Source: Mobula birostris (Eukaryota). Taken from it: a DNA stretch of 64,000 nt. Location: the NCBI RefSeq assembly GCF_030028105.1, contig NC_092383.1:97611604-97675603 (forward strand). Reading direction: 5' to 3'. Below the pieces are notes generated by a model. That model searched no databases and had not been told where the DNA came from. It saw only the letters and a program-made list of their open reading frames with translations. The first letter of the stretch is position 1; every line of letters begins with the position of its first letter. Both the position numbers and the translations under genes were made by a program. Positions 8,371-51,949 of this stretch are shown here, piece after piece.

Positions 8371-8443
8371 CCCCTCTCCTGTATGACAGCAGACAAAACA
8401 GACACACCCAAGCAGGTTTCAAAGACAGTTATCACAAGAGTTA

Positions 8444-8581
8444 CAATCAAGATGAAATCTGCCGAAGCTGGAAATCCAAGCAACACACAGAAAATGTTGG
8501 AAGAACTCAGCAGGCCAGGCAGGATCTACACAAAATACTGGAGGAACTCTGCACTGAGTTCCTCCAGCATTTTGTGTGTGT
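8444..8581. mobile_element. Fold-back mini-Penelope element with 15-bp TSD
   Basis: Family tail on - strand plus hairpin cacaaaatactggaggaactc..gagttcctccagcattttgtg; flanked by ttatcacaagagtta (8429-8443) / ttattacaagagtta (8582-8596). Confidence 0.7.
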
Positions 8582-9059
8582 TTATTACAAGAGTTATTAG
8601 ACTCTTACACGGATACCTAAAAGATGAGCTCAAGGTCACCTTATTGTTGGATCATGATTCATTTGCAATTCGAAGGTTCTTTGGAAATCAAGAATAAGGC
8701 ATAAAACATTGGTTTTGATCGAATTGTTAAGTGTTACAAAAGCAAAGTAATAATTAAAAGAATAAAGAAAAGACCAATCAAAAAAAGTTGTGGTCTTATA
8801 CTCAGACTAGAGTATAACAATTCATAACAATTAACCTATAAAATAGCAAGAGTTATGTAGCGTGACAACTGCTACTGAAAACCAATACGTATGAAGCAAC
8901 TGTGCCATATTTACTGGAAAATTCACAGAACTATTTTATGGATGCATGTGATTATCTATAAATAAAAGCAAGTATGCGATTAAGTTAAACCACAAAAATG
9001 TTTACAATTCTACACCCTAATACAACATTCCCTATTGGATTCTAAATCACACGTTTACA

Positions 9060-10720
9060 TAGACATAGAAACAGAAAACCTATAGCACAACACAGGCACT
9101 TCAGCCCACAAAGCTGTGCCGAACATCTGTCCTTACCTTAGAGTTGCTCATAGCCTTCTATTTTTTGAAGCTCCATGTACCTATCGAGGAGTCTCTTAAA
9201 AGACCCTAATATATCCGTCTCCACCACCATCGCTGGCTGCTCATTACACACAATCACCACTCTCTGCGTAAAAAACTTACCCCTGACATCTCCTCTGTAC
9301 CAGCTTCCAAGCACCTTAAAACTGCGCCCTCTTGTGTTAAACATTTCAGCCCTGGGAAGAAGCCTCTGACTATCCACACGATTAATGCCTCTCATCATCT
9401 TGTACACCTCTATCAGGTCACCCCTCATCCTCCTTTACTCCAAGGAGAAAAGGCCAAGTCCACTCAACCTATTCTCATAAGGCATGCCCCCCCAGTCCAC
9501 CAACATCCTTGTAAATCTCCTCTGCACCATTTCTATAGTTTCTACATCCTTCTTGTAGTGAGGTGACCAGAACTGAGCACAGTACTCCAAGTGGAGTCTG
9601 ACCAGGGTCCTAGATAGTTGCAACATTACCTCTCAGCTCTTAAACTCAATCCCACAATTGATGAAGGCCAATGCATCGTATGCCTTCTTAACCACAGACT
9701 CAACCTGTGTAGCTCCTTTCAGTGCCCAATAGACTCGGGCCCCAAGATCACTCTTATCCTCCACACTGCCAAGAGTCTTACCATTAATACTATATTCTGT
9801 CATCATATTTGACCTACCAAAATGAACACCTCACACTTATCTGGGTTGAACTCCATCTACAGCTTTTCAGCCCAGTTTTGCATCCCATTGATGTCCTGCT
9901 GTAATATGACCTGTCTACAACCACTCTTTGCCTTCTGTGGGCAAGCCAATTCTGGATCCACAAAGCAAGGTCCCCTTGGAACTCATGCCTCCTTACTTTC
10001 TCAATAAGTATTGCATGGGGTACCTTATCAAATGCCTTTCTGAAATCCATATACACTAGATCTAATGCTCGACCTTCATCAATGTGTTTAGTTACATCCC
10101 CAAAAAATTCAATCAGGCTCGTAAGGTACGACCTGCCTTTGACAAAGCCATGCTGACTATTCCTAATCCTATTATACCTCTCCAAATGTTCATAAACCCT
10201 GCCTCTCAGGATCTTTTCCATCAACTTATCAACCACTGAGTAAGACTCACTGGTCTATAATTTCCTGGCCTATCTCTTCTCCCTTTCGTGAATAATGGAA
10301 CAACATCCGTAACCCTCCAATTCTCCAGAACCTTTCCCATCCTCATTAGTGATGCAAAGATTATTGCCAGAAGCTCAGCAATCTCATCCCTCGTCCTCCC
10401 CGAGTAGCCTGGGGTATATCTCGTCTGGTCCCGGTGACTTACCCAACTTGATGCTTTCCAAAAGCTCCAACACATCCTCTTTCTTAATATCTACAAGCTC
10501 AAGCTTTTCAGTCCGCTGCAAGTCATCTCTACAATCACCAACTTCCTTTTCCGTACTGAATACTGAAGCAAAGTATTCATTAAGTACCTCTGCTATCTCC
10601 TCGCACTTCCAGACACACTTTTCCACTGTCACACTTGATTTACCCTATTCTCTCATGTCTTGTACTCTTGCTCTTCACAAACTTGTAGAATGCCTTGGGG
10701 GTTTCCTTCATCTTGTCTGC
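9060..10720 (-). mobile_element. CR1 LINE, 5'-truncated, internally deleted/degraded
   Basis: ORFs 10384..10632, 10221..10475, 9814..10236, 9435..9626 and 9138..9428 are consecutive CR1 ORF2 pieces; 3' tail near 9060. Confidence 0.9.
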
Positions 10721-10959
10721 CATGGCCCCTTCTGGCTCTGGCTCTTGAGTTATACGGAAAGACTGGATAGACTTGACATTTTTCTTCTGGGGCTTGGAAG
10801 CCTGAAGGTGACCTTGTGACTTTTATAAAATCATGATGGGTGGAGGGAAGCTGTGAAAGGTACTTGATAAGAAGGCAGACGAGAGAAACAGCAGCTAATA
10901 TTATGCCTGTGTAGATCACAGACTGTCAGCATTAACAGTGAATTCTTCAGTTTCAGGTA

Positions 10960-11385
10960 AGCAGCTCCTCCTTTGTGTACTGTCTTCACATCTTGATCTA
11001 CCTTGATCCCATCGCTATATCTCTTTCCCCTCCTCTAACTCCACCATCTGCCTATCACCTACACATTACCCTTCCCCCTAATGCCCCCTCTGCCCTCCAC
11101 AGTTCCCTCTCTTTAATCCGCGTGCTGCTTCCTTTCCAATCAGATCCCATCACCTTCAGCCCTTTGTCACTTCCACCAATCACCTGCCAGATGCTGGTGT
11201 CACTCCTTTCCCCATCGGCCTATCACCTCCCCCACAACACCTGGATCCGCCCATCACCTGCCCATTCGCGCCACTCCCTTCACCCCCCGCCCACCCCTGC
11301 CGCATCTCTCTACGCTGGCCATTTTCACTTTCCTTCAATCCAGATGGAGAGTTTCAACCTGAAACATCAACAGTTTCAGTCGTTA
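10960..11385 (+). mobile_element. Penelope-like element 3' region (pyrimidine tract and degenerate hammerhead end)
   Basis: Resembles 45240-45520 (cctatcacct repeats; ttcaatccagatggagagtttcaacctgaaacatcaacag). Confidence 0.55.
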
Positions 11386-11745
11386 CATTTCATTTCAGAG
11401 AAATGTATACAATATACATCTTGAAATTCTTTTTCTACGCAACTATCCAGGCAAACAGAGGAGTGCCCCAAAGGATGAATGACAGTTAAACGTTAGTACC
11501 CCACAGCACCCCCATCTCCCCCTCCCACACACAAGCAGCAGCAAGGCAACAACCCCTCCCTCCCCCACTAGCAAAATAACTGCATCAGCATCCTCCACCG
11601 AGCACTCAGCATCAATAAAGACACAGACTTGCAGTACCTCAAAGACCACTCGTTCACCCGATAAGTCAACATTCCATAGGCTCTCTCTCTCCCTAATAAG
11701 GGAAAAAGATGTGTCTCCGTTTCACCACGAGAGAGGAGACATCAT
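11385..11745 (-). mobile_element. Unclassified abundant non-LTR 3'-end family
   Basis: Reverse-complement homologue of 17690-18127; also matches 55740-56470. Confidence 0.55.
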
Positions 11746-11879
11746 CTGTTCATTTCTCCCCACAGATGCTGTCTGACATGCGGAGTTCCTCCAGCATTTT
11801 GTGTTGCTCCAAAGTCCAGTGTCTGCAGTCTCCTCAGTCTGCTTGATAGGAAATGTTCAAAAGGATATGGGCCAGATGG

Positions 11880-12240
11880 AGAGAAACAGGGTCATAGTGT
11901 CACAGAGCACAGAAACAGGCCTGAGGCCATGCTGAAACCATTTAAACTGCCTATTCCCATCGACCTGCACTGGGACCAAACAACTCAATTCCCCTACCAT
12001 CCATGTACCGATCCAAACTTTTCTTAAACGTTGAAATTGAGTTTGCATGAACCACCTGTGCTGTCAGCTTATTCCACACTCTCACAGTCCTCTGAGTGAA
12101 GGAGGTTTCCCTCAAGCTCCCCTTAATCTTTTCACCTTTCACCCTTAACTCATGACCTCCAGTTGCAGTCCCATCCAACCTCAGTGGAAAAAGCCTGCTT
12201 GCATTTACCCTATCTATACCTCTTACAATTTTGTATACCT
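11880..12240 (-). mobile_element. CR1 LINE 3' fragment
   Basis: EVYKIVRGIDRVNASRLFPLR..FTQR-VRVWN in ORF 11951..12343. Confidence 0.85.
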
Positions 12241-12241
12241 C

Positions 12242-12922
12242 TGAAACCCCCTTATACTGGGTGTCTCTGGAAACCTGGCTTGTTAGCCCCTCGCTAACAG
12301 CCACTAAATTCTGATAAACCCACCTTTCTCTGGCTTCGTACATCTAGGGTGCACACAACTTGTGTCCTGCCAAATCTGTGAGCTTAGGATGTCTCGCCCA
12401 CCCGAAACCTGGCTTGTGTGAATGCTGTGTGATTTACTGCCCCCGGCAAGGGATAACAGATCGTACAGTGCATACTATTAAAAATAAGTATATTTAAGAA
12501 TGTTAATTTAAACAAACAGTTATTAAATGAAAGAAAGAAAAAAAAAAGGCCATTACTCTTAAATATTCAAATGTGCACTTAAGTTGGGGATCATCTTGAA
12601 CTCCTCTGTCACTGACATGCTGGTCCCTCGGTCTGCGTAAAAGCACAAAGCACCTTCTGAACGTCACTCAAAATCCATCTGAAACAAACGGCTCTCCCAA
12701 GGGAGTATTGGGTCTTCCTCTTGATGCCGTTTATCTGTACAAAGCACCTTCTGCAATAGGAATGGCATCCTCAGCCATCTTTTCCCCCTGTCTTCTTCCA
12801 GCTCCCACCAACAAAGACCTTCTCCCAATCCAACCATTCTGATTGGCTGACAGCACATTCCTAAGTTGAATAGAAAACCTTTTAACTTAGTTCAAACTCA
12901 AACAGAACAGACTGCACTTACA
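12242..12922 (-). mobile_element. LTR-like sequence (probable solo LTR)
   Basis: On - strand begins TGTAAG and ends ..GGTTTCA; carries the cacacagcattc motif shared with 43117-43470 and 45904-46643. No TSD found. Confidence 0.45.
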
Positions 12923-12967
12923 GAACTGCTAAAATGAAATACCTATGGCATAGCATTATACATTCAT

Positions 12968-15662: not shown

Positions 15663-15821
15663 ACTCTAAATCTTCTGCATTCTCAGGAACACAGTCATAA
15701 CTTGTTCAATGTTTCCTGATAATTCAGGTCCACTGGACCCAGCAATTTTCTTTGTACCCCTTCAAGCTTGTTTACATCATTCCAACAGAACAGTGAGAAA
15801 GGCAGTGATTGACCTTGGATT

Positions 15822-15925
15822 CCAGCACAGCAGTGGGGAAGCAGAGGGTGTCACTGGATACCAGCACAGCAGTGGGGAAGCACAGGGTGACACTGAATAC
15901 CAGCACAGCGGCGGGGAAGCAGAGA
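15822..15925. repeat. 39-bp tandem repeat, about 2.7 units
   Basis: ccagcacagcagtggggaagc.. units start at 15822, 15861 and 15900. Confidence 0.85.
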
Positions 15926-23188: not shown

Positions 23189-24734
23189 TGAGTCTCCTCA
23201 ACACCCGTTGTGACAGAACGGCCGGAGGCTTCAGCTATGAGTCTCATCCAATCCACTGCTTCATCCACCCACCCATCCATGGAGCCAGAAAGTCTCTCAC
23301 TGCTGGTGGAGGAACACTCTGAATGAAGGTGACCGTCCCAGTTCAGTACAACAGAGCAGGACAGCTGATATCTATTGCTGGGAGTCCTCCCGAGGGACAG
23401 TGTCTCTGGTAGATACACCACACCACCAGTCTGGGAGGATGCCCAGTGTGAAGATAACCCTGCAGGGTCTGAAAGTGGAACATTTCAGCCTGCCCTGTCC
23501 TAGAGGTCTGTGTTGAGACATTGTAGATGGGTTTGACTCTGTATGTAACCCTAGCCTGCCCTGTCCTAGAGGTGTGTGTCGGGACATTGTAGAGGGTTTG
23601 ACTGTATATAAACCCAGCTCTCCCTGGTGTGGGAACCCATAATGATGGGCCCACAGATGTTGGGAACTCATGAAACTGAGGAAGGTCATGTGGCCCATTG
23701 TGAACCAGCTCTGAAATTACTGAATCACCAGAAGATTTCAGCAAATGTGGCTCTTCAGCCTGTCAATTCCTGCTAGCTTCATGCTGTATCAGTCCAGCTC
23801 ATTTCACATATTCACACCTCTCTCTCTCTCTCTCATTCAGTGAGAGAGTGACTGGTCCTATTCATGCAGGGTTTGATCTGTGTGAGGACCATCATGGCCT
23901 CCACCTCCCCTCCCAACACATGACAATGTTTTCCCTGGAGTACACTCCCCACTTCCCTCTCACCGTTCGGTCTAGTACTTTCTGTGGCTCTTGGTATTGT
24001 CTTCTCTGCCCAGAGACAGAGATCCTTTCTGTTTAGTCAGAGACCCTCATCGTTTCACCACCCTATTAAATCTGCCCTCAGCCTCTGTTCCCTCATTGTG
24101 CCATGACCCCTCCATCAACCTTCCCCAGCCCTGTTCCATCCACAGAGCTCTCTTGTCCTGCCTCAGCTCTGACCATCCCCACCCAGACATTCATTATCCC
24201 CGTTCACAGATCTGGGATCCTGATCAACAAATGCAGGGATACAGACTGCCTCACCCTCTTGTCATTCCTCATTCAAAGATCTGTGGGCAAGTTCCCTTTG
24301 TCCCTCCACACCACTTACACTCTCCCATTCATCCCACCTTCCCTCATCATGTTCACCTTCCCCAAACAGTACCCCCACTGCATCCGTGGATGGGGTCCAA
24401 TTTGTCATGTCTGTGCCCCACCACGCCCAGCTCTGCCCCCTCTATTGATATCTGGCTGCAAGTTGCAACTTCCTTCCTCAGGACCAGGTGCAAGAAGTCT
24501 TCACTCTTCCCTGTGTGGGCTCAGTGTGGCCCAGCTCTCTCACTGGGCTGGGACCCAGACAATGTGCCAGCAGACTCCCCTCAAGCCATCAGGCTAATCT
24601 ACACCTCCACCGATAAACCCACCACCATTATGTTGTAACTTCCTGTCAGAGTAACATAATGTACAGATATTCCACTACCTATTGTCACTTTATGAACATG
24701 CAATCAGTTTATGTACATCAGCTACTCTTATGTA

Positions 24735-24845
24735 GGATTTCGGCCCAAAATGTCAACCGTTTATTCATTTCCATTGATGCTGCCTGACCTGCTGAGTTCC
24801 TCCAGCATTTTGTGTTTTGCTTTGGGTTTCCAGCATCCGCTGCCT
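24735..24845 (+). mobile_element. Penelope-like terminal repeat remnant inside a Rex-type 3' end
   Basis: gatttcggcccaaaatgtcaaccg..gatgctgcctgacctgctgagttcctccagcattttgtg..ccagcatc. Confidence 0.7.
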
Positions 24846-27159: not shown

Positions 27160-27345
27160 GAATCACAAGCAAGAGAAAATCTGCAGATGCTGGACATCTG
27201 AGCAACACACACAAAATGCTGGAGAAACTCAGCAGGCCAGGCAGCACCGAAGGAAAAAAGTACAGTCGACGTTTCAGGCCAAAACCCTTTGGCAGTCCTT
27301 TGAAGGGTCATGACCTATAACGTCGACTGTTTACTCTTTTCCATA
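27160..27345. mobile_element. Fold-back mini-Penelope element
   Basis: Long copy on - strand (ctgcagatgctgg..gtcgacgtttcaggcc) followed by a short + copy (gaagggtcatgacctataacgtcgactg); TSD not found. Confidence 0.7.
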
Positions 27346-28539: not shown

Positions 28540-31360
28540 TAGAGTCATAGTCAAAGAGAAATACAGCACAGAAACCGGCCCTTCTGTCCATCTAATCCAT
28601 GCTGAAACCATTGAAACTGCCTACTCACAATGACCTGCACCGACATCATTGCCCTCCATATCCCTACTATCCATGTACCTACCTATCCAATTTTCTCTTA
28701 AGCATTGAAATGGAGCTCGCATGGACCACTTGCACTGGCAGCTCATTCCACAATCTCGTGACCCTCTGAGTGAAGAAGTTTCCCTTCACTTCTAACCTTT
28801 CAACCTTAACCAATGATCTCTGGTGGTAGTCCTACCCAACATCAGTGGAAAAAGCCTTTGTGTTGCCCCTATTATACCCTCATAATTTTGTATACCTTTA
28901 TAAATCTCCTCCCAATTGTCCACATTCTAAAGAAAACAGTTGTGATCTATTCAATCTTTCCTTATAATCCAGGTCCTCCCGACCCAGCAACAGCCTTGTA
29001 AATTTTCTCTTCACTCTTTCAACCCTGTTTACATCCTTCCTGGAGGTAGGTGACCAAAACTCCATTCAATGCTCCAAATTAGGCCTCACCGATGTCTTAT
29101 ACAACTTCATCATAACATCTCATCTTCTGAAGGCCAATGTGCCAAAAGCTTTCTTTATGACCCCCATCTATGATGTCATTTTCAATGAATTATGAATCTG
29201 TATTCCCAGATCCCTTTGTTCTACCACAGTCCTCAGTGCCCTACCATTCACTGCGTAAGACCTGCTGTTGGTCCTACTGAAATGCCAAACCTCGTACTTG
29301 TCTGTCTTAAATTCCATCTGCCATTTTTCGGTCCATTTTTCCAGCTGATACAGATCACTTTGCAATCCATGATATCTTTCCTCACTGTCCACTGCACCCC
29401 AAAACTGTCATCCACAAATTTGCTGATCTAGTTATCCACATGATTATTTAGATCATTGATACAGATGGCAAACAACAAAGGACCCAGCATTGACACCACT
29501 AGGACACCACTAGTTACAGGCCTCCAGTCCGAGAGGCAACCCTCTACTAGCACTTCTGGCTTCTTCCACAAAGCCAATGTCTAATCCAATTTACTCTCTC
29601 ATCCTGAATGCCAAGCAACAGATCCTTCTTGACCAGACACCCATGTCGGACCTTGTCAAATGCCTTTCTAAAACATCTACTACCTTGCCTTCATCCACTT
29701 TCCCAGTAACTTCCTCGATAAAAACTTACAAGATTAATTAGACACGACATACCACGTACAAAGCCATGCTGACTATCCTTAATCAGTCCATATCTATCCA
29801 ATTACTGATATATCTGGTCCCTCAGAGCCTTTTTTTAAACAGTGAAACACCATTGGCTATCCTCCAATCCTTTGGTACCACTCCTATAGTTAAGGGTGGT
29901 TTAAATATCTCTGCTAGGCCCCTGGAAATTTCTGCACTTGGTTTCCACAGGATCCGAGGGAACACCTTGTCAGGTCCTGTGGATTTATCCACACTGATTT
30001 GTCTCAGGGTGGCAAACACCTCCTGCTCTGTAATCTGTGGAGGATCCATGAAGTTGCCACTATGGCTCACTTCTGTAGACTCTGTATCCACCCGCCCCCA
30101 CCCCCCCCCAAGTAAATACAGATGCAAAGAAGGCATTTCAGATCTCCCCCCATCTGTTCTGGCTCCACACATGGACTACCATTCATGTCTTCCAGCAAAC
30201 CAATGTTGTCCCTAGCAATCCTTTTGCTCTTAACATACCTGTAGAATCCTTCAGGATTCTCCTTCATCTTGTCTGCTAGAGCAACTTCAAACCTTATTTT
30301 AGTCTTTCTAATTTCTTTCTAAAGCCTTCCCTTGCATTTCTTGTGTTTCATGAGCACCTCATTTGTTCATACTTGCCTATGCCTGCTATATACCCCCTTT
30401 TATCTCTGAAACAGGGGCTCAAGATCTCTTGTAAACCAAAGTTCCCTATGCATGCTATTAATTCATGCATGCACCTTTTATTCTGACAGGCATATAAAAT
30501 CTCTATTCTGAAAATTTCATTTTTGAAGGCCTTCTAGTTTCCAAGTACACCTTTGTCAGAAACAGCCTGTCCCAAACCACACTTGCCAGATAATTTCTGA
30601 TACCATCAAAATTAGCCTGTCTCTAATTTAGGATCTCAACTCACAGACCAGATCTATCTCTTGGTATCATACACAAAATGCTGGGGAAATCAACAGGTCA
30701 GGCAGCACCTAAAGAAAACAGTACCATCGACCCTGAGGGTCTCGGCCTGAAATGTCAACTGTACTCTTTTCCATAGATGCTGCCTGGCCGGCTAAGTTCC
30801 TCTAGCATTTTGTGGGTGTTGCTTGGATTTCCAGCATCTGCAAATTTTCTCTTGTTTGTGAATTGGACTACCTCTTTGTATATTTACTTTAAAACTAATT
30901 GCATTGTTGTCAATAGATGCAAAGTGTTCCTCTGCACCAACTTCTGTCATCTGCCCTGTCTCATTTCCTAATAGCAGACTAATTATCAGCAACTCTCGTT
31001 GGGACTTCTACACACTGATGAAGGAAACTTTCCTGAATACATTTAACAAACTCTATCCCATCTCGTCCTTTTACAGTATGGGATTCCCAGCCATTATGTG
31101 GAAAGTTAAAATCACCAACTATAACAACCTTATGTTTCTGGCAACAGTCTGCGAGCTCTCTATAAATTTGTTCCTCTAAATCCTGTGGTTGGGTTGTTTG
31201 TAATTTAGCCCCATTAACATGGTCATTCCTTTTTGATTTCTCAGTTCCAGCCGTAACACCTCACTAGTCGAGTTCTCCAGTCAATCTGCGGTGATATTCT
31301 CTCTGACTAGTAACGCCAGCCCTCCTCCTTTAGTCCCTCTCACTCTGTCACATCTAAAAC
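28540..31360 (-). mobile_element. Old CR1 ORF2 (APE to 3' tail), degraded
   Basis: Pieces such as KENPEGFYRYVKSKRI, VDKSTGPDKVFPRIL and MEFKTDKYEV in ORFs 30067, 29822 and 29168 (-). Confidence 0.88.
30668..30867. mobile_element. Fold-back mini-Penelope element inserted in CR1
   Basis: Short - copy then long + copy; flanked by ctatctcttggtat (30654-30667) / ctacctctttgtat (30868-30881), 12/14 match. Confidence 0.7.
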
Positions 31361-37904: not shown

Positions 37905-39230
37905 ATAAGACCACAAGACATTGGTGCAGAATCAGGCCATTCAGCCCATCGAGTCAGCTGCAATATTTGATCAAGGCTGGTCCATTTCCCTCTCAATCCC
38001 ATTCTTCTGCCTTCTCCACATAATCTTCCATGCCCTGACTTATCAAGAATCCATCAACCTCAGCCTTGAATACACTCAATGATCTGGCCTCCAAAGCCAC
38101 CAGTGGTAACAAATTCCACAGAAGGAATACCCTCTGGCTAAAGAAATTCCTCCTCATCTCCTTTTCAAATAGACATCTCTCTATTCTGACATTGTGACCT
38201 CTAGTCCTGTACTCTCCCACAATCAGAAACATCCTCTCCACATCCAGTCTATCTAGTACTTTCAACATTCGATAGGTTAGAATGAGGTCCTCCCTCATTC
38301 TTCTAAATTTCAGTGAGTACTGTTCCAGAGCTATAGAATGTTCATATGACAAGACTCTCAAGTCCAGAAACATTTTCTGAACCTCCTCTGAACCCCCTCC
38401 AACATCAGCACATCTTTTCTTAGAGAAGTGCCTTTAGAGAATCCTGCACAAGGAATCACATGTCCCTAGGGTTTTGGCCTGAAACATCAATTGTACTCGT
38501 TTCCATAGATGAGTTCCTTCGATCTCCAGCATCTGCAGAGTTACTCTTGTTTGTGGTTGTATTCCCTTTGCACTTTGCATTTATGAATTTTCTCCCCGTT
38601 TAGAAAATAGTCTACCGTTTTATTCCTCCTCCCAAAGTGTATGACCACTTAGTTCCCAACACAATGTTTCATCTGGCACTTCTTTGCCCAGTCTCCTCAT
38701 CTGTCCAAGTCTTTCAGCAGCCTCTCTGCCTCTGCAACACTATTTGCCCCTCTAACTACCTTCATATCATCCACAAACTTGCCCACAAAGCCATCAATTC
38801 CATCATCGAAATCATTGATACAACGTTAAAAGAATAAGTCCCAACATCGCTACCTGTTGGAACACAATTTGCCAGCAGCAGCCAATCAAAAATGTTCACT
38901 GTATTCATACTTCTTGTCTCCTAATTATCCAATGATCTTCCAATCCCATGTCACCTTTTTTCAAGGATATGATTTATTTTTTATCAATAGGCTGTGCTTC
39001 ACCCTCTACCTACCTGCCTGTCATTTCAATACAATGTGTATCCATGGATTTTAAGCTCCTAACAATAACTTTCTTTCAGTTATGACTCAGTGATGCCCAC
39101 AACATCATACCTGTCAAGCTCTAACGGTGCTACAAGACCATCTATCTTGTTTTGCATGCAGCGTGCATTCAAATATAACACCTTCAGTTAACTGTTTTCC
39201 CTTTCATAAACTTGTCAGCCCCAGCTGATC
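37905..39230 (-). mobile_element. CR1 fragments (3' end 37905-38430; older piece 38600-39230) with a Penelope terminal remnant at about 38470-38555
   Basis: ORF 37993..38373 (EQYSLKFRRMREDLI..FFSQRV); ctccagcatctgcagag family tail. Confidence 0.75.
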
Positions 39231-39779
39231 AGTCACCCCGAGCTTCACAATGTACTGCAGCCCCACACTGTAACTTCCTGTTCCCCACCCACAATCCCTC
39301 CCGGGACATCCTTTCCAATTCTTATTGCCTGATTAACCATTGACATCCTGGAGGACAGTCCCAGAGGTTGGAGCCTGAGCAAAACCCAGGATGTCGGATG
39401 TCGTGAAGGGTCCTGTGAAGCCCCCGCCCCAAGATTCTGGGGCTGTGGACCGCCACACACTGCAAGAGGTTTATTGTTAATATTGTGCACTCCCTGCCAA
39501 CATGAACCAGTGAAGGTTTCACCAGTGAAATCACGCTCAGTCTTTCAGCCCTAGAGATTGGTGATGAGGTATCGGGCAGAGGGCACATTTTTTATCTGTG
39601 CACTGTCAAATTTAATAGCTTGGCCAGCATCTGTGGAGAGTTAATGTTTCAGGTCACACACGTCTCTCTCCACAGATACTGCCTGACTTGCCTCAGGCTT
39701 CCAGCAGTTCCTGATTTTCCTAGAGATTTCCAACTTGTACAATTGCTTTATATTTACTGCTTGAGATTGTCTACTTTAT

Positions 39780-41400: not shown

Positions 41401-41732
41401 TAAGTTTAATTGAATTAAAGTACGTTTGATGCAGATTCAAGATAGAGTGAAGCAATAGCAGAAAACTGACCAGCGCCCTCTAGGGGCGATGCTGCCAGTG
41501 ACGCTGCTCCTTAGGAAACACCCCTCTACGGGACAGTCCTCCAAGACAGCGCCACCATCCAAACTCCGTGCAATTACTGGATGGACACAACATTGTCTCT
41601 CAGCGAGCCCTGGCGACTCAGGTGAGGGTGACAACGACGAATCATATAGGTTTAACTGCCATGTCACCAATTGCCCCATAAAGACCAGGGATGTGGAGAT
41701 TGGAGCTATGAATCTGAATCAGAATCAGGTTT

Positions 41733-41931
41733 CACACATCAAAGTTGCTGGTGAACGCAGCAGGCCAGGCAGCATCTCTAGGAAGAGGTACAGTCGACGT
41801 TTCTTCCTAGAGATGCCCGGCCTGAAACGTCGACTGTACCTCTTCCTAGAGATGCTGCCTGGCCTGCTGCGTTCACCAGCAACTTTGATGTGTGTTGCTT
41901 GAAATTCCAGCATCTGCAGAATTCCTGTTCT
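41733..41931. mobile_element. Fold-back mini-Penelope element with perfect 14-bp TSD
   Basis: Perfect 71-bp inverted arms 41733-41803 / 41824-41894; TSD tcagaatcaggttt at 41719-41732 and 41932-41945. Confidence 0.9.
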
Positions 41932-41934
41932 TCA

Positions 41935-42185
41935 GAATCAGGTTTAATAGCAACAGCATATGTCATGAAATTTGTTGTCTTTGCAGCAGCAGTACAATGT
42001 AATACATAATAATAAAGAAAAAACTGTCAATTACAATAACTATATACAATAAATTAAATAAGTATTGTAAAATAAATATACATAAACAGTAGTGAGGTAA
42101 TAAAGTTAGTGAGTATTAAAGGATACAGATATTTTTTTTCATCAACTGCCTGAACAGGAAAAGATTGATAAGTGGTTCCAGGAAG
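41935..42185 (-). mobile_element. Rex-Babar LINE 3' end (its tail is the target of the element above)
   Basis: Reverse complement of the aaacctgattctgattc tail and AT-rich UTR. Confidence 0.6.
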
Positions 42186-43470: not shown

Positions 43471-44369
43471 CCGTCTCCCCTCCTCGCCGAATGCCCCGCT
43501 TGGGGTTCGACCCCTTTAGCGCACTCACAGCACCTGTTCTAAATGACCTCCACCCAACCATTCCAATCTCTGTAATCCCCTCTTTCACAATCTCTGTGAT
43601 TTCCTCCCTCCTCTTCAATCCTCTCCATCTTTATGGACTCAATTTATTGCTACATTTCCCCGTCTCTGTGACACCCACCTCCATCACATGCCCCAGTCTC
43701 TGTAAACCCTTCCATCTTCTACGCCCCTCTCTCACTAAGCTCCCCTCCCTGTCTTTCCATTCCCCTTCACCCCTCTCCCTGTATGCCCCTGTAACCCCTT
43801 GGATCGGTCCGCGGCGTTAGTTGAGAGAAGACCATTTCTGGCCCCGCCAATCGTGTGAAATTTCAGGTGCAAAACCTTCTGTTTCAGTGGATGCTGCGTG
43901 ATTTGTTCCCCTGTTCTAAATCAGTACCATGAAATAACAGGCCATGTACCATATACAATTAAGTGATTTAGCTTTATAATTCTGAATTTGACTAAAGGGT
44001 TAGTAAAGAAAACAAAAAGAGAAGGGCTCTTTTTAATGAGCGAATCTAATGAGCACAGGTTGGAGCTCACGGTTTCCCTATCACAGCCCGGTACAGAAAC
44101 ACCAATGCACTGGAAAGGAAAATACGACAAAATGTAGCGGATACGACCCAGTCCATCACCGGGGTAAAGCCCTCCCCACCATTGAACCCATCTACACAGA
44201 GCGCTGTCACAGGGAAACAGCGTCTATTATCAGGGATCACCACCTTACAGACATCCAACATCCTTCACGATATCTCTGAATTTACTGAAGTGATCCCCTA
44301 CATCCACATCCAAATCATTTCAAACGATAAAGTCTCCATGTAGTATCACTGATTACCGGTATCCAATCA

Positions 44370-45590
44370 CGAAAACCTGGATCCACCTCCTCTTATTTCG
44401 AAGCAATGATTTCATACAACATGCAAGTTGTCCTCGTCAAGATGGATCACACTGCTTTGGTGCAGAATGTAGTGCTCCCAGCCTGAGGCTTTCCATTCCA
44501 GGACGTCTAAGGTGTCCTCTTTCTTTAAGGATTCTGGTTTCCTTCTGCCGTCATCAATGATGCCCTCACCCGCATCTCCTCCATTTCCCACACTTCGGTC
44601 CTCACCCCATCCTCCCGCCACCACAAAAGGAACAGAGTTCCCTTGTCCTCACCTACCACCCCACCAGCCTTCGGATCCAGCACATTATCCTCCATAACTT
44701 CCGCCACCTTCAACAGGACCCCACAACTAAGCACATCTTTCCATCTCCACCCCTCTCCACTTTCCGCAGGGATCAGTCCCTCAGCGACTCCCTGGTCCAC
44801 ACGTCACTCCCCACTGATCTCCCACCCGGCACTTATCCCTGTAAGCGTAAGTGCTACACCTGTCCCTACTCCTCCTCTCTTGCCACCATTCAGGGCCCCA
44901 AACAGTCCTTCCAGGTGAGGCAACACTTCACTCGTGAGTCTGTTGGGCTCATCTATTGCATCCGGTGCTCCCGGTGCGGCCTCCTCTACATCGGTGAAAC
45001 CCGACGCAGATTGGGAGACTACTTCGTCGAGCACCTCTGCTCCGTTGGCCACAACAGACAGGATCTCCCATTTGCCACCCACTTCAACTCTGCTTCACAT
45101 TCCCATTCGGATATGTCCATACATGGCCTCCTCTACTGCCATGATGAGGGCAAACTCAGGTTGGAGGGGCAAAACCTCATATACCATCCAGGTAGTCTCC
45201 AGCCCCCTGGTATGAGCATAGAATTCTCCAACTTCCAGTAATTACCTCCCCCTCCCTTCCCCTATCCCTATTTCACTCTACCCCCTCCCCCAGCTGCCTA
45301 TTATCTCCCTCATGGTTCTACCTCCTTCTACTACCCATTGTGCTTTCCCCTATTCCTTCTTCACCTTTCCTGCCTATCACCTCCCTGCTTCCCCTCCCCC
45401 ACGGGGCAGTATCTTTCCCGTTACTGGTTCTCCTTCCCACCCTCCCCCCCTTCTTTATAGGGCCTCTGCCCCTTCCCTCTTCAGTCCTGACAAAGGGTTC
45501 CGGCCCGAAACGTTGACTGATCGTTTCCACGGATGCTGCCTGATCTGCTGAGTTCCTCCAGCGTGTTGTGAGTGTTGCGCCGATCAATAC
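44370..45590 (+). mobile_element. Penelope-like element 3' portion: linker zinc motif, GIY-YIG endonuclease, terminal repeat with hammerhead
   Basis: YPCKRKCYTCP (from 44840), then LIYCIRCSRCGLLYIGETRRRLGDYFVEH (GIY-YIG); pyrimidine tract; cagtc-ctgacaa-agggttccggccc-gaaa-cgtt-gactg at about 45482-45519. Confidence 0.9.
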
Positions 45591-45903
45591 TTTATTGCCT
45601 TCTGCAAATGATCTATTTGATTGTGCAGGGAAAATCTTAAATCTGACAAAGTCCTATTGGTTATTTCTGATCAGTGAACGCTTTTCCTGCCCCTCAGGAC
45701 TTTTCATTATCTCCCCTCCCACTAACGTATACCTCCACTGCACCCTTTATAAACCTTCGACGCCGTTCTTATAATGAGACGACCAGATCTGAACACAATA
45801 CTCCAAGAGTAGCCTAACCATGATTTTATAACGCTGCAGCATTCCCCTCGTTGCTCTTGAGTTCTGTCTCCCGACTAACGAAAGTCAAAACAACATACAG
45901 CTT

Positions 45904-46643: not shown

Positions 46644-46664
46644 TTTCATTCCAAAATCTTCCTC

Positions 46665-47870
46665 TGTCATGGTCCGGATCGGGGCCCCTTTAAATTTACC
46701 TTGTTTATGTTACGATCCGGACCATTGATTCCCTGTTTTCCTGTGTCCCTCGACTTTGGTGATTAGAGGCAATTAACACTCGGCTGAACCGGTAGTTTAT
46801 AGTCTCCGGCTTTCAGCCGTTCGGTGGGAGAGCGTCTGCAAAGTCATCAAAGCTACGGTGTGCCGATGTCATCTGGCCGCAGCAAGCCTCGTCTCTTCCG
46901 AAGCGAGTGCCTCTCCTCACCGGAGCAACCCTGTCCAGTTACCTCGCCGAAGCGAGCCTGCAATGTTTCCTCACCGAGGTGGGTTTACCCGCCGGAGGGA
47001 ATCAAGAACCGCTGTTTACTGTTCCCGGGCCGAGACGAGAGCTCGCCACTACCCGGAGGCTCCAAGTCAAGTCCTGGCTCCGGGGGCATTCAAGCAGCAA
47101 GTCAAGTCCTTGTCCTGGTGGCATTCAAGCAGCAAGTCAAGTCCTGGCTCTGGCGGCATTCAAGCAGTAAGTCATGTCCTGTTCCTGGTGGCTTCCAAGT
47201 TCTGAGTCAAGTCCTGGCGGTCTGTGATTCCTGTCCTACCCCCTTGTCTGAATCCCTTCTCTGCCCCTCTCGCCTCTAGCCCTCGTCTGCAGCCCCCGCC
47301 TGCACTTCAGTCTAGTTCCATCGCCGGAGCTCGGTAAGTACTGTCTGGTGTTCATTCGTGTTGGTCTTGTCTTGTCCTGTCCTCTGTGGGGTAACTCAGG
47401 CTGTCTCGTCGTTGCCCCGCGGAGAGTCATGAGTCCCAGCCCTATGTCCTGTACCCAAGGAGGGGTCCCGGCTCTCTGTTCTGTGTATGTGTCTATGGTT
47501 CCATGTACCTGCTCTCCCGAGACCGAGGCTCTGTTTTCACGTTCCTCCTCTCCCTAGCCCATGTCACGTCCTTGCCTAGTTCTGGGGTCCGAGCCCGAGG
47601 CAAGACCCAGGTACTGGGTCCTTGCCCAGTCTCGGGCTCGGAGTCCATACCCTAGCCTCTTCATGTCTCCTCTAATTCTGGGAGCGGATTCCGAGTCCTA
47701 GCCCAGACCCTTGGTCCCAGTCTAGGCATAGTCCTCAGTCCTCGGCCAGTTCGCTACTCCTGCTCCTACCTAGCTCTCCAGATATCGAACAATAAACTAA
47801 ATTTAATTGACCTCACAAGATGTCTTGCATTTGGGTCCACCCTTTCTCCCAAACCCCCGCCATTGCGATA
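46665..47870 (+). mobile_element. Solo LTR, copy 2 (same family as 24964-26219)
   Basis: Starts TGTCATGGTCCGGATC, ends ..gcgata (decayed gtgaca); 5-bp TSD tcctc (46660-46664 / 47871-47875); internal ~33-bp tandem repeats near 47065-47220. Confidence 0.88.
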
Positions 47871-49445
47871 TCCTCATGGTGTGCTTCTCAATGTCTTTGT
47901 TCCCATAGGGAGGTTATAGAACAGGACCAATGAGGGATTGTTCCTTTCCTGTGTCTGACTTCCACCGGTATTACAAGTGGACGAGCCCTCCGTGGCTGAG
48001 AAGTATTTGAGCTACATTTCTTTCATTTCAGTTGGTCTGTTATTTTGAACTAGTTCATTGGTGTAAGCTCATGGGATAATTCGAGACGATAAAGAGCTTT
48101 GAAATATTAAGAGGACGGTAGATGCTTCGCTATCCTGACGACAGAAAACCATTTCAGTATTCCTGAATCTGAGATTTGGCATTGTTTTATTTTGGATTGT
48201 GTAATTTGGACTAGATTAACAAGCCTAGTTTGAAAAACTGCTTTGGGGTGTTCTGCCATCCTGAGATTTCTTTTTGCACTCTGCTGCAATAGTTCATTTC
48301 CAGGCTTTGCTGGAAGATTTGAAGACATTTATGTGATTAAAGTTCTGGCTCAGTTTGAGGGTGTTTCTTTGTTTTTGTGGCTCAATGACATTTCCTGGTC
48401 TTTATGTGCTGAATAATTGGTCAATCTCGATAAATTCGGAGGATAAGACCGTTTGTCTAAAGAGATTGTCATTGCAGTCACAGCTCTCAAAGGCTTTCTG
48501 ATGGATTTATGTTGAAGACCCGTGTCATCTGTAATCCTGTGGTTGAAGATTATTCTGAGAAAACATAAGATGCTTTATACGATTTTCATTCTGAAAGTTT
48601 GGATAATAGTGCGATGTTCGTCTCTTTATAGTGAAGATTTTATCATTTCCTTTTCCTAGCTACTGTCCGAGGAAAGTGCAGAAGTCTTGGGTTCTACCTT
48701 GCAAGGTCTGATCTCGTAGGTTCCTCGCTGGGGACAAATTTCGGGGGACTTTGAAGTACATGGTGCATGTGCTTGACACTGGTTATTCTCTTTTTTAAAT
48801 GTTCATGAGCAGTTTAATCGGGCACTTCGTCGAAGAGTGTCTTTGAGGTCCGCAGTCGGCTAGCAGTGCGGGGGGGAAATGAATGAACCAAATTGAGTAG
48901 TCCTGTACTGCGGGTTGATGTTTGATATTCTATGTGTTGTTCACTCGCTTTTTCCCGTTTGTATAATTTGTTTTTTTTTCACGGTGGGTTTTTAATGTTT
49001 TCTGTGAACTGGTTCCATGCTGTTTCTTTGCTTCGTGTCTGCGTGTGGAATGACGAATCTCAGAATTCTGTTATGTAGACCCGCACATTCTTTATTAATA
49101 AATGTACTTTGAATCTGTTATGGACTAGTCTGTTGTGTTAATTTCTATCGTTTTATGGATCTGAGATTTTGGATTCTGAGAAAGTGATTTTTCTGCGTCA
49201 CTTATTGGATCTATTTGTTCTGGTTTTCCAGACATATGAACCAAATAACTATCTGCTCTTTAATGTCCGTGATTTAAGGTGTGTTTTTTTTTGAATTTCT
49301 GAGCCACCGCACGTGTTTATTACTTCAGTAGTAATTCGATGTATATCCTGGGAGAGCATATGGTTCTGAGAAGCTCTGTTGAAAATCTTTATTTGTATAA
49401 GCATGTTATACTGTATTATGTTTTATTGTACACATATATGCACTA

Positions 49446-50548
49446 ATGGAGAATTGGTTAGCAGACAGGAAGCAAAGAGTGGGAATAAACGGGACCTATT
49501 CAGAATGGCAGGTGGTGACTAGTGGGGTACCGCAAGGCTCAGTGCTGGGACCCCAGTTGTTTACAATATATATTAATGACTTGGATAAGGGAATTAAATG
49601 CAGCATCTCCAAGTTTGCGGATGACACGAAGCTGGGTGGCAGTGTTAGCTGTGAGGAGGATGCTAAGAGGATGCAGAGTGACTTGGGTAGGTTGGGTGAG
49701 TGGGCAAATTCATGGCAGATGCAATTTAATGTGGATAACTGTGAAGTTATCCACTTTGGTGGCAAAAATAGGAAAACAGATTATTATCTGAATGGTGGCC
49801 GATTAGGAAAAGGGGAGGTGCAACGAGACCTGGGTGTCATTATACACCAGTCATTGAAAGTGGGCATGCAGGTACAGTAGGCGGTGAAAAAGGCGAATGG
49901 TATGCTGGCATTTATAGCGAGAGGATTCGAGTCCAGGAGCAGGGAGGTACTACTGCAGTTGTACAAGGCCTTGGTGAGACCACACCTGGAGTATTGTGTG
50001 CAGTTTTGGTCCCCTAATCTGAGGAAAGACATCCTTGCCATAGAGGGAGTACAAAGGAGGTTCACCAGATTGATTCCTGGGATGGCAGGACTTTCATATG
50101 AAGAAAGACTGGATGAACTGGGCTTGTACTCCTTGGAATTTAGAAGATTGAGGGGGGATCTGATTGAAACGTATAAGATCCTAAAGGGATTGGACAGGCT
50201 AGATGCAGGAAGATTGTTCCCGATGTTGGGGAAGTCCAGAACGAGGGATTACAGTTTGAGGATAAAGGGGAAGCCTTTTAGGACTGAGATTAGGAAAAAC
50301 TTCTTCACACAGAGAGTGGTGAATCTGTGGAATTCTCTGCCACAGGAAACAGTTGAGGCCAGTTCATTGGCTATCTTTAAGAGGGAGTTAGATATGGCCC
50401 TTGTGGCTACGGGGATCAGGGGGTATGGAGGGAAGGCTGGGGCGGGGTTCTGAGTTGGATGATCAGCCATGATCATAATAAATGGCGGTGCAGGCTCGAA
50501 GGGCCGAGTGGCCTACTCCTGCACCTATTTTCTATGTTTCTATGTTTC
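49446..50548 (+). mobile_element. CR1 (HER1-like) LINE, 5'-truncated, same young subfamily as 5570-7150
   Basis: ORFs 49446..49880 and 49884..50453 are split by one TAG; (ttctatgt)n tail. Confidence 0.95.
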
Positions 50549-50811
50549 TAATTGGCGCACCGGATGGAGGAGCGTGTTTAAGTCGTCAAAATACTTTGAG
50601 GTGGCCCGCGGATTTGAAGTGAAAGTCGACCCTAATCTCATTAAATCGGGGTTGCAGTGGAGTCGCAGCGGAGCAGGAAGCGTGAGGGGAGATGATGGAA
50701 CAATCCTTGGGGCACAGCGACAGCACGGAACCTCACTAGAGAAACATTTTCACACCCTGTTTATGGATTATGACGGTCATATGGGTCACAAGAGATATCC
50801 TCGAAGTTTCC

Positions 50812-51949
50812 TCAGCTTCTTTTACACTGGATGCACTTTGCGATCAGTGCCATCGCCGATTTCAGATGAGCTTTCAGCTGATCGCTGAACTTATTCTGGA
50901 TCATGGCGTAAAGAAAAGTATTTGTGCAGCAACTCGGGATCTTCAGCATCAAGCCCAGTTCTTGCAGGAAAGTGGCTAGATTTGTAGACACCAAATTCAA
51001 ACAATATAATCTGTACCGAATATAATACACTGTATACAGCGCCCATAAGAATATGAAATTACCGGAGATGACCAGCAGGAAAATGAGGGATTTCCTTCGG
51101 CTCTCCATCTCTGGGTCTTTAGGACACTCGCCACATCTCATAATCTTGAGCCTCTCGCGGGCAGCGCTGGCTGCTAAAACGTGTTAGATTATTGAAGCAT
51201 TGAGTAGCAGAACCAGCACAAATGGGACCACTAACAACAGGAATTCTGCAGATGCTAGAAATTCAAACAACACACATCAAAATTGCTGGTGAACGCAGCA
51301 GGCCAGGCAGCATCTCTAGGAAGAGAGACAGTCGACGTTTCAGGCCGAGACCCTTCGTCAGGATCTTCGAAGGGTCTCGGCCTGAAACGTCGACTGTATC
51401 TCTTCCTAGAGATGCTGCCTGGCCTGCTGCGTTCACCAGCAACTTTCAAATGGGACCACTGGCGTGAGGAAATAATAAAGGATCTCAATTCCTCCCCAGG
51501 TCGTTGAATCCAGCACTCCCTCCCTTTCACGACAGAACCAAGGGTCCTGCAGAAGAAGTTATTGGCCCGTCAGCATAAAATACTAGAAAATATTCTTCAA
51601 ACAGCTCAACACAATCACTGCTGCCAAAACCACGGCCGCCGTTCTCGCGATGCAATGTTTGCTTTTCAGTTTCGAGTAACCGATAGCCACACTTCGATCG
51701 AATGTGAAAACGACGGTGAAGCAAACCGAACAGTCGGTAGATGCATAAAGAACGGCGTGCATATTACACAGAGGGATGGAATACATGAAAGCAAACTGCC
51801 TGCTATACAGAATCGGAATTTGGCTGAGTATCAGATCGAAAAAAAAATAACGTACAGGTCAGCCGCGGCCATGGCCAAAGGGTATAAAGAGACACAGTTT
51901 GAAACACCGCACTTTCGCCGAGATAGGATCACAATCGTCACCACATTTG
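50812..51949 (-). pseudogene. GPR139/GPR142-like class A GPCR pseudogene, main exon (TM1 end to C-terminus)
   Basis: Acceptor ttttctctacacacag|; ANVVTIVILSRRKCG..AMAAADL..DCSVCFTVVFTFDRSVAI..DPWFC..TPVVPFVLVLLLNA..DPEMESRRKSLIFLLVISGNF..SCCTNTFLYAMIQ. Lesions: frameshift at the A9 run 51839-51847, stops at 51583-85, 51559-61 and 51184-86, and an insertion in TM5. Exon 1 not found. Confidence 0.9.
51233..51446. mobile_element. Fold-back mini-Penelope element with perfect 14-bp TSD, inside the GPCR TM5 codons
   Basis: 79-bp arms 51279-51357 / 51368-51446 (2 mismatches); TSD caaatgggaccact at 51219-51232 and 51447-51460. Confidence 0.92.

What the first reader, a model, noticed from the sequence alone, without database searches (positions are those of the whole stretch)
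8429..51460. Family of fold-back 'mini-Penelope' insertions with 14-15 bp TSDs
Seen: at least five elements of 140-215 bp (8444-8581, 27160-27345, 30668-30867, 41733-41931, 51233-51446) consist only of the Penelope terminal repeat plus an inverted truncated copy of it. Four have 14-15 bp TSDs (two perfect), so each fold-back unit inserted as one event. The same terminal sequence caps the GIY-YIG-encoding element at 44370-45590, and about eight further single-copy remnants occur. Established: PLE insertions often carry an inverted partial pLTR. Inference: a non-coding, ribozyme-derived, retrozyme-like parasite mobilised by the PLE, with a fixed-length staggered cut, present at very high density (at least 5 in 64 kb).
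Basis: partly seen in the sequence, partly recalled or inferred. Interest (0 to 1): 0.75.

Follow-up and report, generated by a model that had tools for sequence, protein, structure and literature searches.

The report
Head-to-head Penelope retrotransposon stubs
The five small palindromic insertions are real, but they are the usual by-product of Penelope-like retrotransposon integration in a manta-ray genome (two very short copies laid head to head in one event), not a new ribozyme-based parasite.

Summary
Observation confirmed. All five fold-backs exist at the stated coordinates. Four have 14-15 bp target-site duplications (two perfect). The same about 135-nt terminal sequence follows a GIY-YIG open reading frame at 44780-45241, and eight further remnants are present.

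Interpretation only partly supported. Each fold-back is a single insertion made by Penelope-like element (PLE) machinery with a 14-15 bp staggered cut. It matches the published canonical PLE insertion form:
- extreme 5' truncation;
- an adjacent inverted truncated copy;
- a 30-40 bp "tail" at one end only (35 nt here, 5 of 5).

The five have five different internal architectures. Both arms of each always carry the same subfamily-specific bases. The hammerhead catalytic box is absent by construction in two, was never captured in a third, and is mutated in a fourth. No direct tandem of ribozymes exists, so they are not retrozyme-like and there is no sign of a separately amplifying family.

Three of five short arms end at the tail-less terminus. 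This fits priming of reverse transcription from both nicked target strands.

The family is very high-copy in three related species, so the density is genome-wide.

The parts
8444..8581 (-). Fold-back E1. On the - strand it reads: antisense fragment (profile 98->67), a short sense fragment (65-90), then a sense copy (49->tail). It contains no hammerhead box. TSDs at 8429-8443 and 8582-8596 (14/15).
27160..27345 (-). Fold-back E2. Long sense arm with tail at 27160-27296 and short inverted arm at 27301-27345 (profile 8-49 only). The junction lies at the first base of the hammerhead box. No TSD found.
30668..30867 (+). Fold-back E3. Short inverted arm at 30668-30734 that begins at the tail-less terminus, and long sense arm with tail at 30734-30867. 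TSDs at 30654-30667 and 30868-30881 (12/14).
41733..41931 (+). Fold-back E4 (young). Short inverted arm at 41733-41803, 13-nt filler copied from the arm at 41804-41816, and long sense arm with tail at 41817-41931. It lacks the CUGANGA box by construction. The arms match 71/71. TSDs at 41719-41732 and 41932-41945 (14/14).
51233..51446 (-). Fold-back E5 (young). Long sense arm at 51233-51363 including the 35-nt tail (51233-51267), loop at 51364-51367, and short inverted arm at 51368-51446. The arms match 77/79. TSDs at 51219-51232 and 51447-51460 (14/14).
44560..45241 (+). 3' part of a PLE open reading frame: the linker with a Cys-rich motif and the GIY-YIG endonuclease. The element is 5'-truncated and no RT domain is present in the window.
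45242..45584 (+). C/T-rich 3' UTR followed by the terminal repeat at 45485-45584. The hammerhead-like box is mutated (CUGACAA). The copy ends at the tail-less terminus.
1731..1832 (+). Single-arm copy. It continues upstream into C/T-rich PLE-type UTR, so it is an ordinary 5'-truncated copy.
3720..3809 (+). Single-arm copy, tail-less. It continues at least 130 nt upstream into PLE-type UTR.
11340..11829 (+). Decayed copy split by about 360 nt of other sequence (11340-11376 and 11738-11829). PLE-type UTR lies upstream.
24729..24843 (+). Single-arm copy truncated inside the hammerhead region, with part of the tail.
38465..38541 (+). Single-arm copy with an internal deletion. It is truncated inside the hammerhead region and carries the tail.
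39666..39737 (+). Weak, decayed remnant (nhmmer E = 7e-4).
52231..52278 (-). Weak remnant (nhmmer E = 0.02).
54292..54382 (-). Single-arm, tail-less copy. It has the best-kept CUGAUGA...GAAAC box and starts at or near the first base of the box.

Best explanation
These are ordinary integration products of an endonuclease-bearing Penelope-like retrotransposon in a manta-ray genome. The PLE GIY-YIG endonuclease nicks the two target strands 14-15 bp apart.

Inferred mechanism: both 3' ends prime reverse transcription on PLE RNA at the element's two internal start sites. One start site gives a copy that carries the 35-nt tail. The other lies 35 nt further in and gives a tail-less copy. Each cDNA covers only about 70-135 nt, often stopping at the first base of the hammerhead box. 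The two cDNAs are then joined head to head by template switching or microhomology.

The product reads TSD, tail-less inverted arm, sense arm plus tail, TSD. The fold-back is therefore a scar of how the enzyme integrates. It is not a replicating unit and does not depend on the ribozyme.

Shown: the anatomy, the TSDs, the two termini, the heterogeneity and the link to a GIY-YIG ORF. Inferred: dual-strand priming and the way the copies are joined.
For: 1. Canonical PLE anatomy. An inverted truncated copy lies next to a sense copy, and the tail is at one end only in 5 of 5 units. The literature describes exactly this (PMC8557442; PMC3846280).

2. Two recurrent termini 35 nt apart. In contigs of the same species and a sister species, a LINE 3' end at 50550 abuts 51233 (12 and 14 contigs) and 51268 (9 and 11 contigs). 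Frangieh 2024 (PMC11167929) shows two internal RT start sites that define the tail. That study also shows cleavage and extension of both DNA strands.

3. Three of five short arms (E1, E3, E4) begin within a few nt of the tail-less terminus used by single copies. The binomial probability is about 0.007 if the ends were random.

4. TSDs of 14, 14, 14 and 15 bp flank whole units.

5. The five units have five different junction architectures. E4 and E5 are about 95% alike in sequence but differ in structure.

6. Both arms of each unit carry the same subfamily-specific bases: the young type in E4 and E5, the old type in E1 and E3. A long-lived fold-back lineage would need parallel changes on both arms.

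7. The hammerhead box is missing by construction in E1 and E4, incomplete in E3, and mutated in E2 and in the PLE copy. This fits the published finding that ribozyme mutants still insert.

8. Single-arm copies have scattered 5' ends, and several run into PLE 3' UTR. De novo PLE insertions with a median of 128 bp are documented.
Against: - An E5-like junction recurs: both arms meet at the first base of the hammerhead box. It appears in at least 26 distinct contigs of the same species, 33 of the sister species and 6 of a third, and also in the older E2. This needs either a fixed 5' end of the template RNA or some copying of fold-backs.
- E5's short arm ends about 9-12 nt inside the tail-less terminus, and E2's ends far inside it.
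- E2 has no TSD.
- Only contigs, not raw reads, were available. No RNA starts, copy numbers or junction census could be obtained.
- No RT domain is in the window.
- The GIY-YIG Pfam hit is below the gathering score.
Confidence: 0.8

Rival explanations
1. The fold-backs, or the about 135-nt terminal unit alone, form a self-sustaining non-autonomous family. Its own transcripts are copied in trans by the PLE enzyme and it amplifies independently to very high copy number.
For: - The family is enormously abundant: summed word depth is about 10^5-fold that of the single-copy flanks in three species.
- A junction class like E5's recurs in tens of distinct contigs, and a second class (51363->51400 plus one letter) occurs in 2-4 contigs.
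- Three of five sense arms start at the same base.
- Copies that extend upstream show a pyrimidine tract plus CAG. In two cases a TATA-like box lies about 30 nt before that base, so short transcripts could start there.
- PLE enzymes act in trans on RNAs that carry only the terminal sequence (PMC3846280). Non-autonomous PLE partners exist.
Against: - The five units in the window have five different architectures.
- Both arms of each unit always share the same subfamily state.
- A copy that starts at the putative transcription start would lack the upstream promoter.
- Single-arm copies have scattered 5' ends, and several continue into PLE UTR.
- A near-perfect 70-120 bp RNA hairpin is a poor reverse-transcription template.
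- The depth of contigs is not a copy number (tool caveat).
Confidence: 0.14
2. The elements are retrozyme-like. Hammerhead self-cleavage releases a small RNA that circularises and serves as the template.
For: - Two copies keep a CUGANGA...GAAAC core with the extra base before helix II and a palindromic GUCGAC in helix III. These are features reported for PLE minimal hammerheads (PMC4209133).
- Vertebrate non-LTR retrozymes are PLE derivatives.
Against: - Retrozymes need at least two ribozymes in direct tandem (PMC7229834). Here the copies are inverted, and TRF finds no tandem of the unit.
- Four of five fold-backs lack an intact box, two of them from the moment of insertion.
- The arms run across the predicted cleavage site, so the templates were uncleaved.
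- No Rfam hammerhead match appears even at E <= 10.
Confidence: 0.03
3. The elements are MITE-like or foldback DNA transposons moved by a transposase, or hairpins made by replication or repair error.
For: They have terminal inverted repeats flanked by direct duplications.
Against: - The ends are asymmetric: a 35-nt tail sits on one side only.
- The sequence is identical to the 3' end of a GIY-YIG retroelement.
- TSDs of 14-15 bp are not typical of TIR transposons (own knowledge).
- The inner junctions vary.
- Single-arm copies of the same sequence are common.
Confidence: 0.03

Closest known systems
Canonical insertion structure of endonuclease-bearing Penelope-like elements (Penelope/Poseidon/Neptune; Arkhipova 2013 PMC3846280, Craig 2021 PMC8557442, Frangieh 2024 PMC11167929)
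   Same: - Heavy 5' truncation.
- An inverted truncated copy head to head with the sense copy.
- A 30-40 bp tail at one end only.
- Palindromes and fillers at the inverted junction.
- Short TSDs.
- A minimal hammerhead motif in the terminal repeat.
- A GIY-YIG ORF upstream.
- Insertion next to microsatellite-like sequence.
   Different: Here the whole insertion is reduced to the terminal about 70-135 nt on each side, with no ORF. TSDs are 14-15 bp, against 8-10 bp reported in the rotifer. The family is extremely abundant in manta genomes.
L1 twin priming (inversion with 5' truncation)
   Same: It works like it. Both nicked target strands prime cDNA synthesis in one event, which gives an inverted 5' part, a sense 3' part and one TSD pair.
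   Different: In L1 the second primer anneals internally on the RNA, so the inverted part comes from a different, upstream region. Here both primings use the element's own start sites, so the two arms are copies of the same segment and form a hairpin. No paper in the searched library links PLEs to twin priming as a mechanism.
Metazoan non-LTR retrozymes (PMC7229834; bioRxiv 10.64898/2026.07.22.740005)
   Same: They are PLE-related, hammerhead-bearing, non-coding and high-copy.
   Different: Retrozymes are direct tandem repeats of 150-450 bp with canonical type I hammerheads, and they are expressed as circular RNAs. These units are inverted pairs with minimal, mostly broken motifs.
Very short de novo Chlamys (PLE) insertions in Chlamydomonas mutation-accumulation lines (PMC9977147)
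   Same: The median insertion length is 128 bp because of 5' truncation, from an autonomous/non-autonomous PLE pair.
   Different: They belong to a different PLE clade with an N-terminal endonuclease and no canonical hammerhead. Fold-back form is not stated in the passage read.

Membership tests
Penelope-like element insertion (EN+ PLE) | A GIY-YIG endonuclease is encoded immediately upstream of the terminal repeat. | tested here: met
   The ORF at 44780-45241 has a Cys-rich linker and a GIY-YIG motif. Pfam PF01541 gives E = 7e-4 (20.2 bits, below the 22.6 cut-off). The Atlas feature score is 0.96 to eukaryotic GIY-YIG clusters. The terminal repeat lies 244 nt downstream.
Penelope-like element insertion (EN+ PLE) | A telomerase-like reverse transcriptase lies in the same ORF. 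| not testable with these tools
Penelope-like element insertion (EN+ PLE) | An inverted 5'-truncated copy lies adjacent to the sense copy. | tested here: met
   Seen in five of five units.
Penelope-like element insertion (EN+ PLE) | A 30-40 bp tail is present at one end only. | tested here: met
   The tail is 35 nt (51233-51267). It is defined by two recurrent termini in contigs of two species and is present on exactly one arm in 5 of 5 units.
Penelope-like element insertion (EN+ PLE) | A minimal hammerhead motif lies in the terminal repeat. | tested here: inconclusive
   At motif level it is present in two copies: CUGANGA, an extra base, a G-C closed helix II, GAAAC and a palindromic GUCGAC. 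No compensatory changes were seen. There is no Rfam hammerhead hit at E <= 10. Cleavage was not tested.
Penelope-like element insertion (EN+ PLE) | Target-site duplications flank the whole complex insertion. | tested here: met
   Four of five units have TSDs of 14-15 bp. Three are far beyond the random-pair null.
Non-LTR retrozyme | Two or more hammerheads lie in direct tandem repeats of 150-450 bp. | tested here: not met
   The arms are inverted. TRF finds no tandem of the unit in 64 kb.
Non-LTR retrozyme | A canonical type I hammerhead with loop-loop contacts. | tested here: not met
   No Rfam hammerhead match. The box is intact in only one arm of one fold-back.
Non-LTR retrozyme | Expression as unit-length circular RNA. 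| not testable with these tools
   Only Logan contigs were available, and no run is on record as RNA.
MITE / foldback DNA transposon | Equivalent terminal inverted repeats at both ends and a family-specific short TSD. | tested here: not met
   The termini differ by the 35-nt tail. Inner junctions vary. The sequence equals a retroelement 3' end.

The most novel reading that the evidence does not exclude
The terminal about 135 nt (hammerhead box to tail) is a self-contained template. Short RNAs start at a promoter just upstream of the hammerhead box (TATA-like box at about -30, initiator-like TCAGTCC) in any copy that keeps about 40 nt of UTR. The PLE enzyme primes internally on them from both target strands. 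This short-template lineage, rather than truncation of full-length RNA, would then account for most of the very large copy number in manta rays, with complete head-to-head pairs as its signature product.
Probability: 0.15. Interest if true: 0.55.

Novelty: new member of a known kind. Interest (0 to 1): 0.27.

Why it matters
As a discovery it is minor, because the structure is the textbook scar of Penelope-like element integration.

Its use is as natural data on a mechanism that is still poorly understood. Four clean insertions show three things:
- a 14-15 bp stagger between the two target nicks;
- outer ends that coincide with the two alternative reverse-transcription start sites;
- inner ends that often coincide with the first base of the hammerhead box.

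This is the footprint expected if both strands are cleaved and extended, as seen in vitro for the anole element. The great abundance of such stubs in manta genomes offers a large sample for a census of junctions. They also matter practically. They sit in introns of immune-receptor genes, form stable hairpins of up to -172 kcal/mol, and will be mis-called as miRNA-like hairpins or MITEs by annotation tools (sub-threshold Rfam miRNA-precursor hits appeared).

Tried and rejected
- **Rfam.** A gathering-threshold scan of the whole window gave nothing. Permissive scans of E5 and of the best-kept copy gave no hammerhead. On E5, two miRNA-precursor models (mir-789, mir-3926) scored well below their gathering cut-offs on the hairpin, and I take these as generic hairpin matches. 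On the best-kept copy only chance-level hits appeared.
- **TSDs for single-arm copies.** None was significant at the homology boundaries. No 14-mer match with one mismatch or fewer was found within 6 kb upstream of their 3' ends. The controls E4 and E5 were recovered. Their 5' ends therefore remain undefined.
- **Further PLE coding remnants.** tblastn of the GIY-YIG region and blastn of the PLE fragment against the window found none.
- **Discrete 135-nt SINE-like unit.** Rejected for the single-arm copies. Three of them continue into C/T-rich PLE-type UTR, and two are cut inside the hammerhead region.
- **Read laying.** All runs were Logan contigs. Depth cannot be read as copy number, and no RNA ends could be seen.
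- **Empty site for E5.** The sister species has the outer end of the short arm on the same flank. In a third species the alignment stops exactly at the element boundary (51447), which hints at an empty site. The record's remaining letters were not shown, so this stays unresolved.
- **Target motif at the nick sites.** With four cases no consensus emerged.
- **MITE and replication-error readings.** Rejected because of the asymmetric termini and the identity to a retroelement 3' end.


Full report
**What is there**

Reading the five stated places shows in each a shared sequence of about 130 nt followed or preceded by an inverted, shorter copy of itself. blastn with the E5 long arm and an nhmmer profile built from ten copies find 14 loci in 64 kb:
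- the five fold-backs;
- one copy attached to coding sequence;

A search for inverted repeats with 120 nt or less between the arms finds only four pairs in the whole window. Three of them are E5, E4 and E2. E1 and E3 are too decayed for that tool but fold with z = -8.4 and -6.1. Arm-to-arm identity runs from 71/71 (E4) and 77/79 (E5) down to 47/60 (E3), so the events span a long time.

**Orientation and link to a Penelope-like element**

At 44780-45241 on the + strand lies an open reading frame with a Cys-rich linker followed by GIY-YIG motifs. Pfam GIY-YIG gives E = 7e-4, just under the gathering score. The Atlas feature score is 0.96 to eukaryotic GIY-YIG clusters. The frame stays open back to about 44560.

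After the stop codon come 243 nt of C/T-rich UTR, and then the shared sequence at 45485-45584. This fixes the sense strand. In sense, the unit starts with a hammerhead-like box (TCCTGAYGAAGGG ... GAAAC GTCGAC TGT) and ends in a GT-rich stretch plus a further about 35 nt.

**Target-site duplications**

A systematic search gives the following:

| Unit | TSD |
|---|---|
| E1 | 15 bp (14/15) |
| E3 | 14 bp (12/14) |
| E4 | 14/14 |
| E5 | 14/14 |
| E2 | none |

All abut the outer ends of the whole fold-back. In 400 random position pairs only 3 reached the score of E1 or better, and 14 reached E3's score. Each fold-back therefore went in as one event with a 14-15 bp staggered cut. Single-arm copies gave no detectable TSD, as expected at their divergence.

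**The tail and the two termini**

In all five fold-backs, one arm runs about 35-45 nt further out than the other. The last stretch of E5's longer arm is 51233-51267.

Laying Logan contigs of four runs on 49500-55499 shows that both ends are family-wide termini. The runs were the same species, a sister species about 3% diverged, a third species about 6% diverged, and a possible RNA run. In other genomic copies, the 3' end of a CR1/L2-like LINE (50550, ending in an 8-nt microsatellite) is joined directly to two places:
- to 51233 in 12 (X1) and 14 (X5) contigs;
- to 51268 in 9 (X1) and 11 (X5) contigs.

Single-arm copies in the window likewise end either with the tail (24729-24843, 38465-38541, 11738-11829) or without it (3720-3809, 45485-45584, 54292-54382).

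This is the optional 30-40 bp tail of PLEs, often present at only one end of the insertion (Craig et al. 2021; Arkhipova et al. 2013). Frangieh et al. 2024 traced it to two adjacent internal start sites of reverse transcription.

**Architecture of the five units** (profile coordinates; as = antisense, s = sense)

| Unit | Segments |
|---|---|
| E1 | as 98->67; s 65-90; s 49->tail |
| E2 | as 49->8; s 3->tail |
| E3 | as 101->26; s 9->tail |
| E4 | as 101->24; 13-nt filler copied from the arm; s about 17->tail |
| E5 | as about 91->8; s 2->tail |

No two are alike. E4 and E5 belong to the same young subfamily (about 95% identical) yet differ at the outer end, the junction and the filler.

In every unit both arms carry the same subfamily-specific bases. 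A lineage of fold-backs evolving on its own would need every diagnostic change twice, once on each arm. Fresh formation from a single-stranded template explains the pattern simply.

**Ribozyme**

The motif has the features reported for PLE minimal hammerheads:
- CUGANGA;
- one extra base;
- a G-C closed helix II;
- GAAAC;
- a palindromic GUCGAC in place of a real helix III.

The box is intact only in the E5 long arm and in 54292-54382. In the other units its state is:
- E1 and E4 never contained it.
- E3 lacks four bases of it.
- E2, 3720-3809 and the PLE copy carry box mutations, partly shared.

Sources without a canonical box therefore still proliferated. This agrees with the in-vitro finding that ribozyme mutants insert normally.

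The arms run across the predicted cleavage site, so the templates were uncleaved. Rfam finds no hammerhead at any threshold. No direct tandem of the unit exists in the window. Retrozymes are defined by direct tandems of canonical type I hammerheads, so that membership fails.

**Are the single copies a discrete short element?**

No. Copies 1731-1832, 3720-3809 and 11340 continue upstream into the same kind of C/T-rich UTR as the coding copy, with shared short motifs. Copies 24729-24843 and 38465-38541 are cut inside the hammerhead region. Only 54292-54382 starts at the box. That is the scattered pattern of 5' truncation. De novo PLE insertions of median 128 bp have been recorded in mutation-accumulation lines.

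**Mechanism**

With the sense strand on top, the structure reads TSD, antisense arm starting at the tail-less start site, sense arm ending in the tail, TSD. This is what results if the bottom-strand nick primes one cDNA and the top-strand nick, 14-15 nt away, primes a second cDNA, each at one of the element's own start sites. The two short cDNAs are then joined by template switching. The 13-nt filler in E4, the extra direct fragment in E1 and the GTCGAC-adjacent junction in E3 are traces of such switches.

Three of five short arms (E1, E3, E4) begin within a few nt of the tail-less terminus. The binomial probability is about 0.007 for random ends. Snap-back self-priming would not predict this.

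Frangieh et al. observed cleavage and extension of both strands in vitro. The library holds no paper that discusses twin priming as a mechanism for PLEs. Arkhipova et al. 2013 proposed self-priming instead. The dual-priming step is my inference.

**Unexplained residue**

In E2 and E5 both arms stop at the first base of the box, and in E3 the sense arm does. A junction like E5's, with one extra G that restores part of the missing box, is present in 26, 33 and 6 distinct contigs of the three species.

The template RNA therefore often has a fixed 5' end there, or some fold-backs have been recopied. Longer copies show a pyrimidine tract plus CAG just before that base. Two of them also have a TATA-like box about 30 nt upstream. 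A transcription start in the terminal repeat is therefore a reasonable, untested explanation. I give the independent-amplification reading about 14%.

**Abundance**

Summed word depth on the E5 arms is about 2.4 million, against 13-30 on the single-copy flanks in the same species. The contrast is similar in the two other species. More than 128 distinct contigs (the counting cap) cover position 51399, and 685 to 956 distinct contigs leave the arm at 51363. The tool warns that this is not a copy number, but the family is clearly very high-copy genome-wide. Five fold-backs in 64 kb is therefore not a local peculiarity.

The outer 25 nt of E5's short arm lie on the same flank in the sister species (record 25). 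In the third species the alignment stops exactly at 51447 (record 20), which may mean an empty site. This is unresolved.

**Earlier notes of the scan**

The same structures were noted on other DNA of this genome. One follow-up (s1-145291) concluded that they are the usual head-to-head PLE stubs. Another (s1-145165) described a 4-kb PLE fold-back with a 14-bp TSD and a one-sided tail. First-reader notes mention TSDs of 10, 11 and 12 bp. I did not see those sequences. They suggest that the stagger is modal at about 14 bp rather than fixed.

**Limits**

- Only contigs were available for laying.
- No RT domain is in the window.

Noticed in passing
window 49446-50550 (+): This is the 3' part of a CR1/L2-like LINE, with RT motif FADD and the usual C-terminal domain. 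It ends in an 8-nt microsatellite (TTCTATGT-like). In other genomic copies this LINE end is directly joined to either PLE terminus in 9-14 distinct contigs per species, which suggests PLE insertion bias for this microsatellite.
   Followed up: partly
window 45440-45490, 3690-3725, 54383-54430: Copies that extend upstream of the hammerhead box show a pyrimidine tract plus CAG immediately before it. Some also have a TATA-like box about 27-30 nt upstream (TTTATAGG, TTTAAATC, TTTTATC). This could be a core promoter or initiator, or a 3' splice site, at the start of the terminal repeat.
   Followed up: partly
window 53792-54000: An unrelated inverted repeat (53-nt arms, 91% complementary, 103 nt apart) lies inside another very high-copy repeat (53500-54100). 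It was not identified.
   Followed up: no
window 43879-43905: A 25-nt direct match (80%) to the terminal repeat lies 1.64 kb upstream of the copy at 45523-45547. It may be a decayed upstream pseudo-LTR of the GIY-YIG element. The ORF at 44049-44279 between them looks like the C-terminus of a different retroelement.
   Followed up: no
window 11377-11737: About 360 nt of A/C-rich sequence interrupt a decayed PLE terminal repeat between its hammerhead region and its 3' part. This may be a nested insertion or captured DNA.
   Followed up: no
window 51313-51412: The E5 hairpin scores as a miRNA precursor in Rfam (mir-789 at 56 bits, mir-3926 at 42 bits, both below gathering). Such stubs can be mis-annotated as miRNA genes.
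   Followed up: yes
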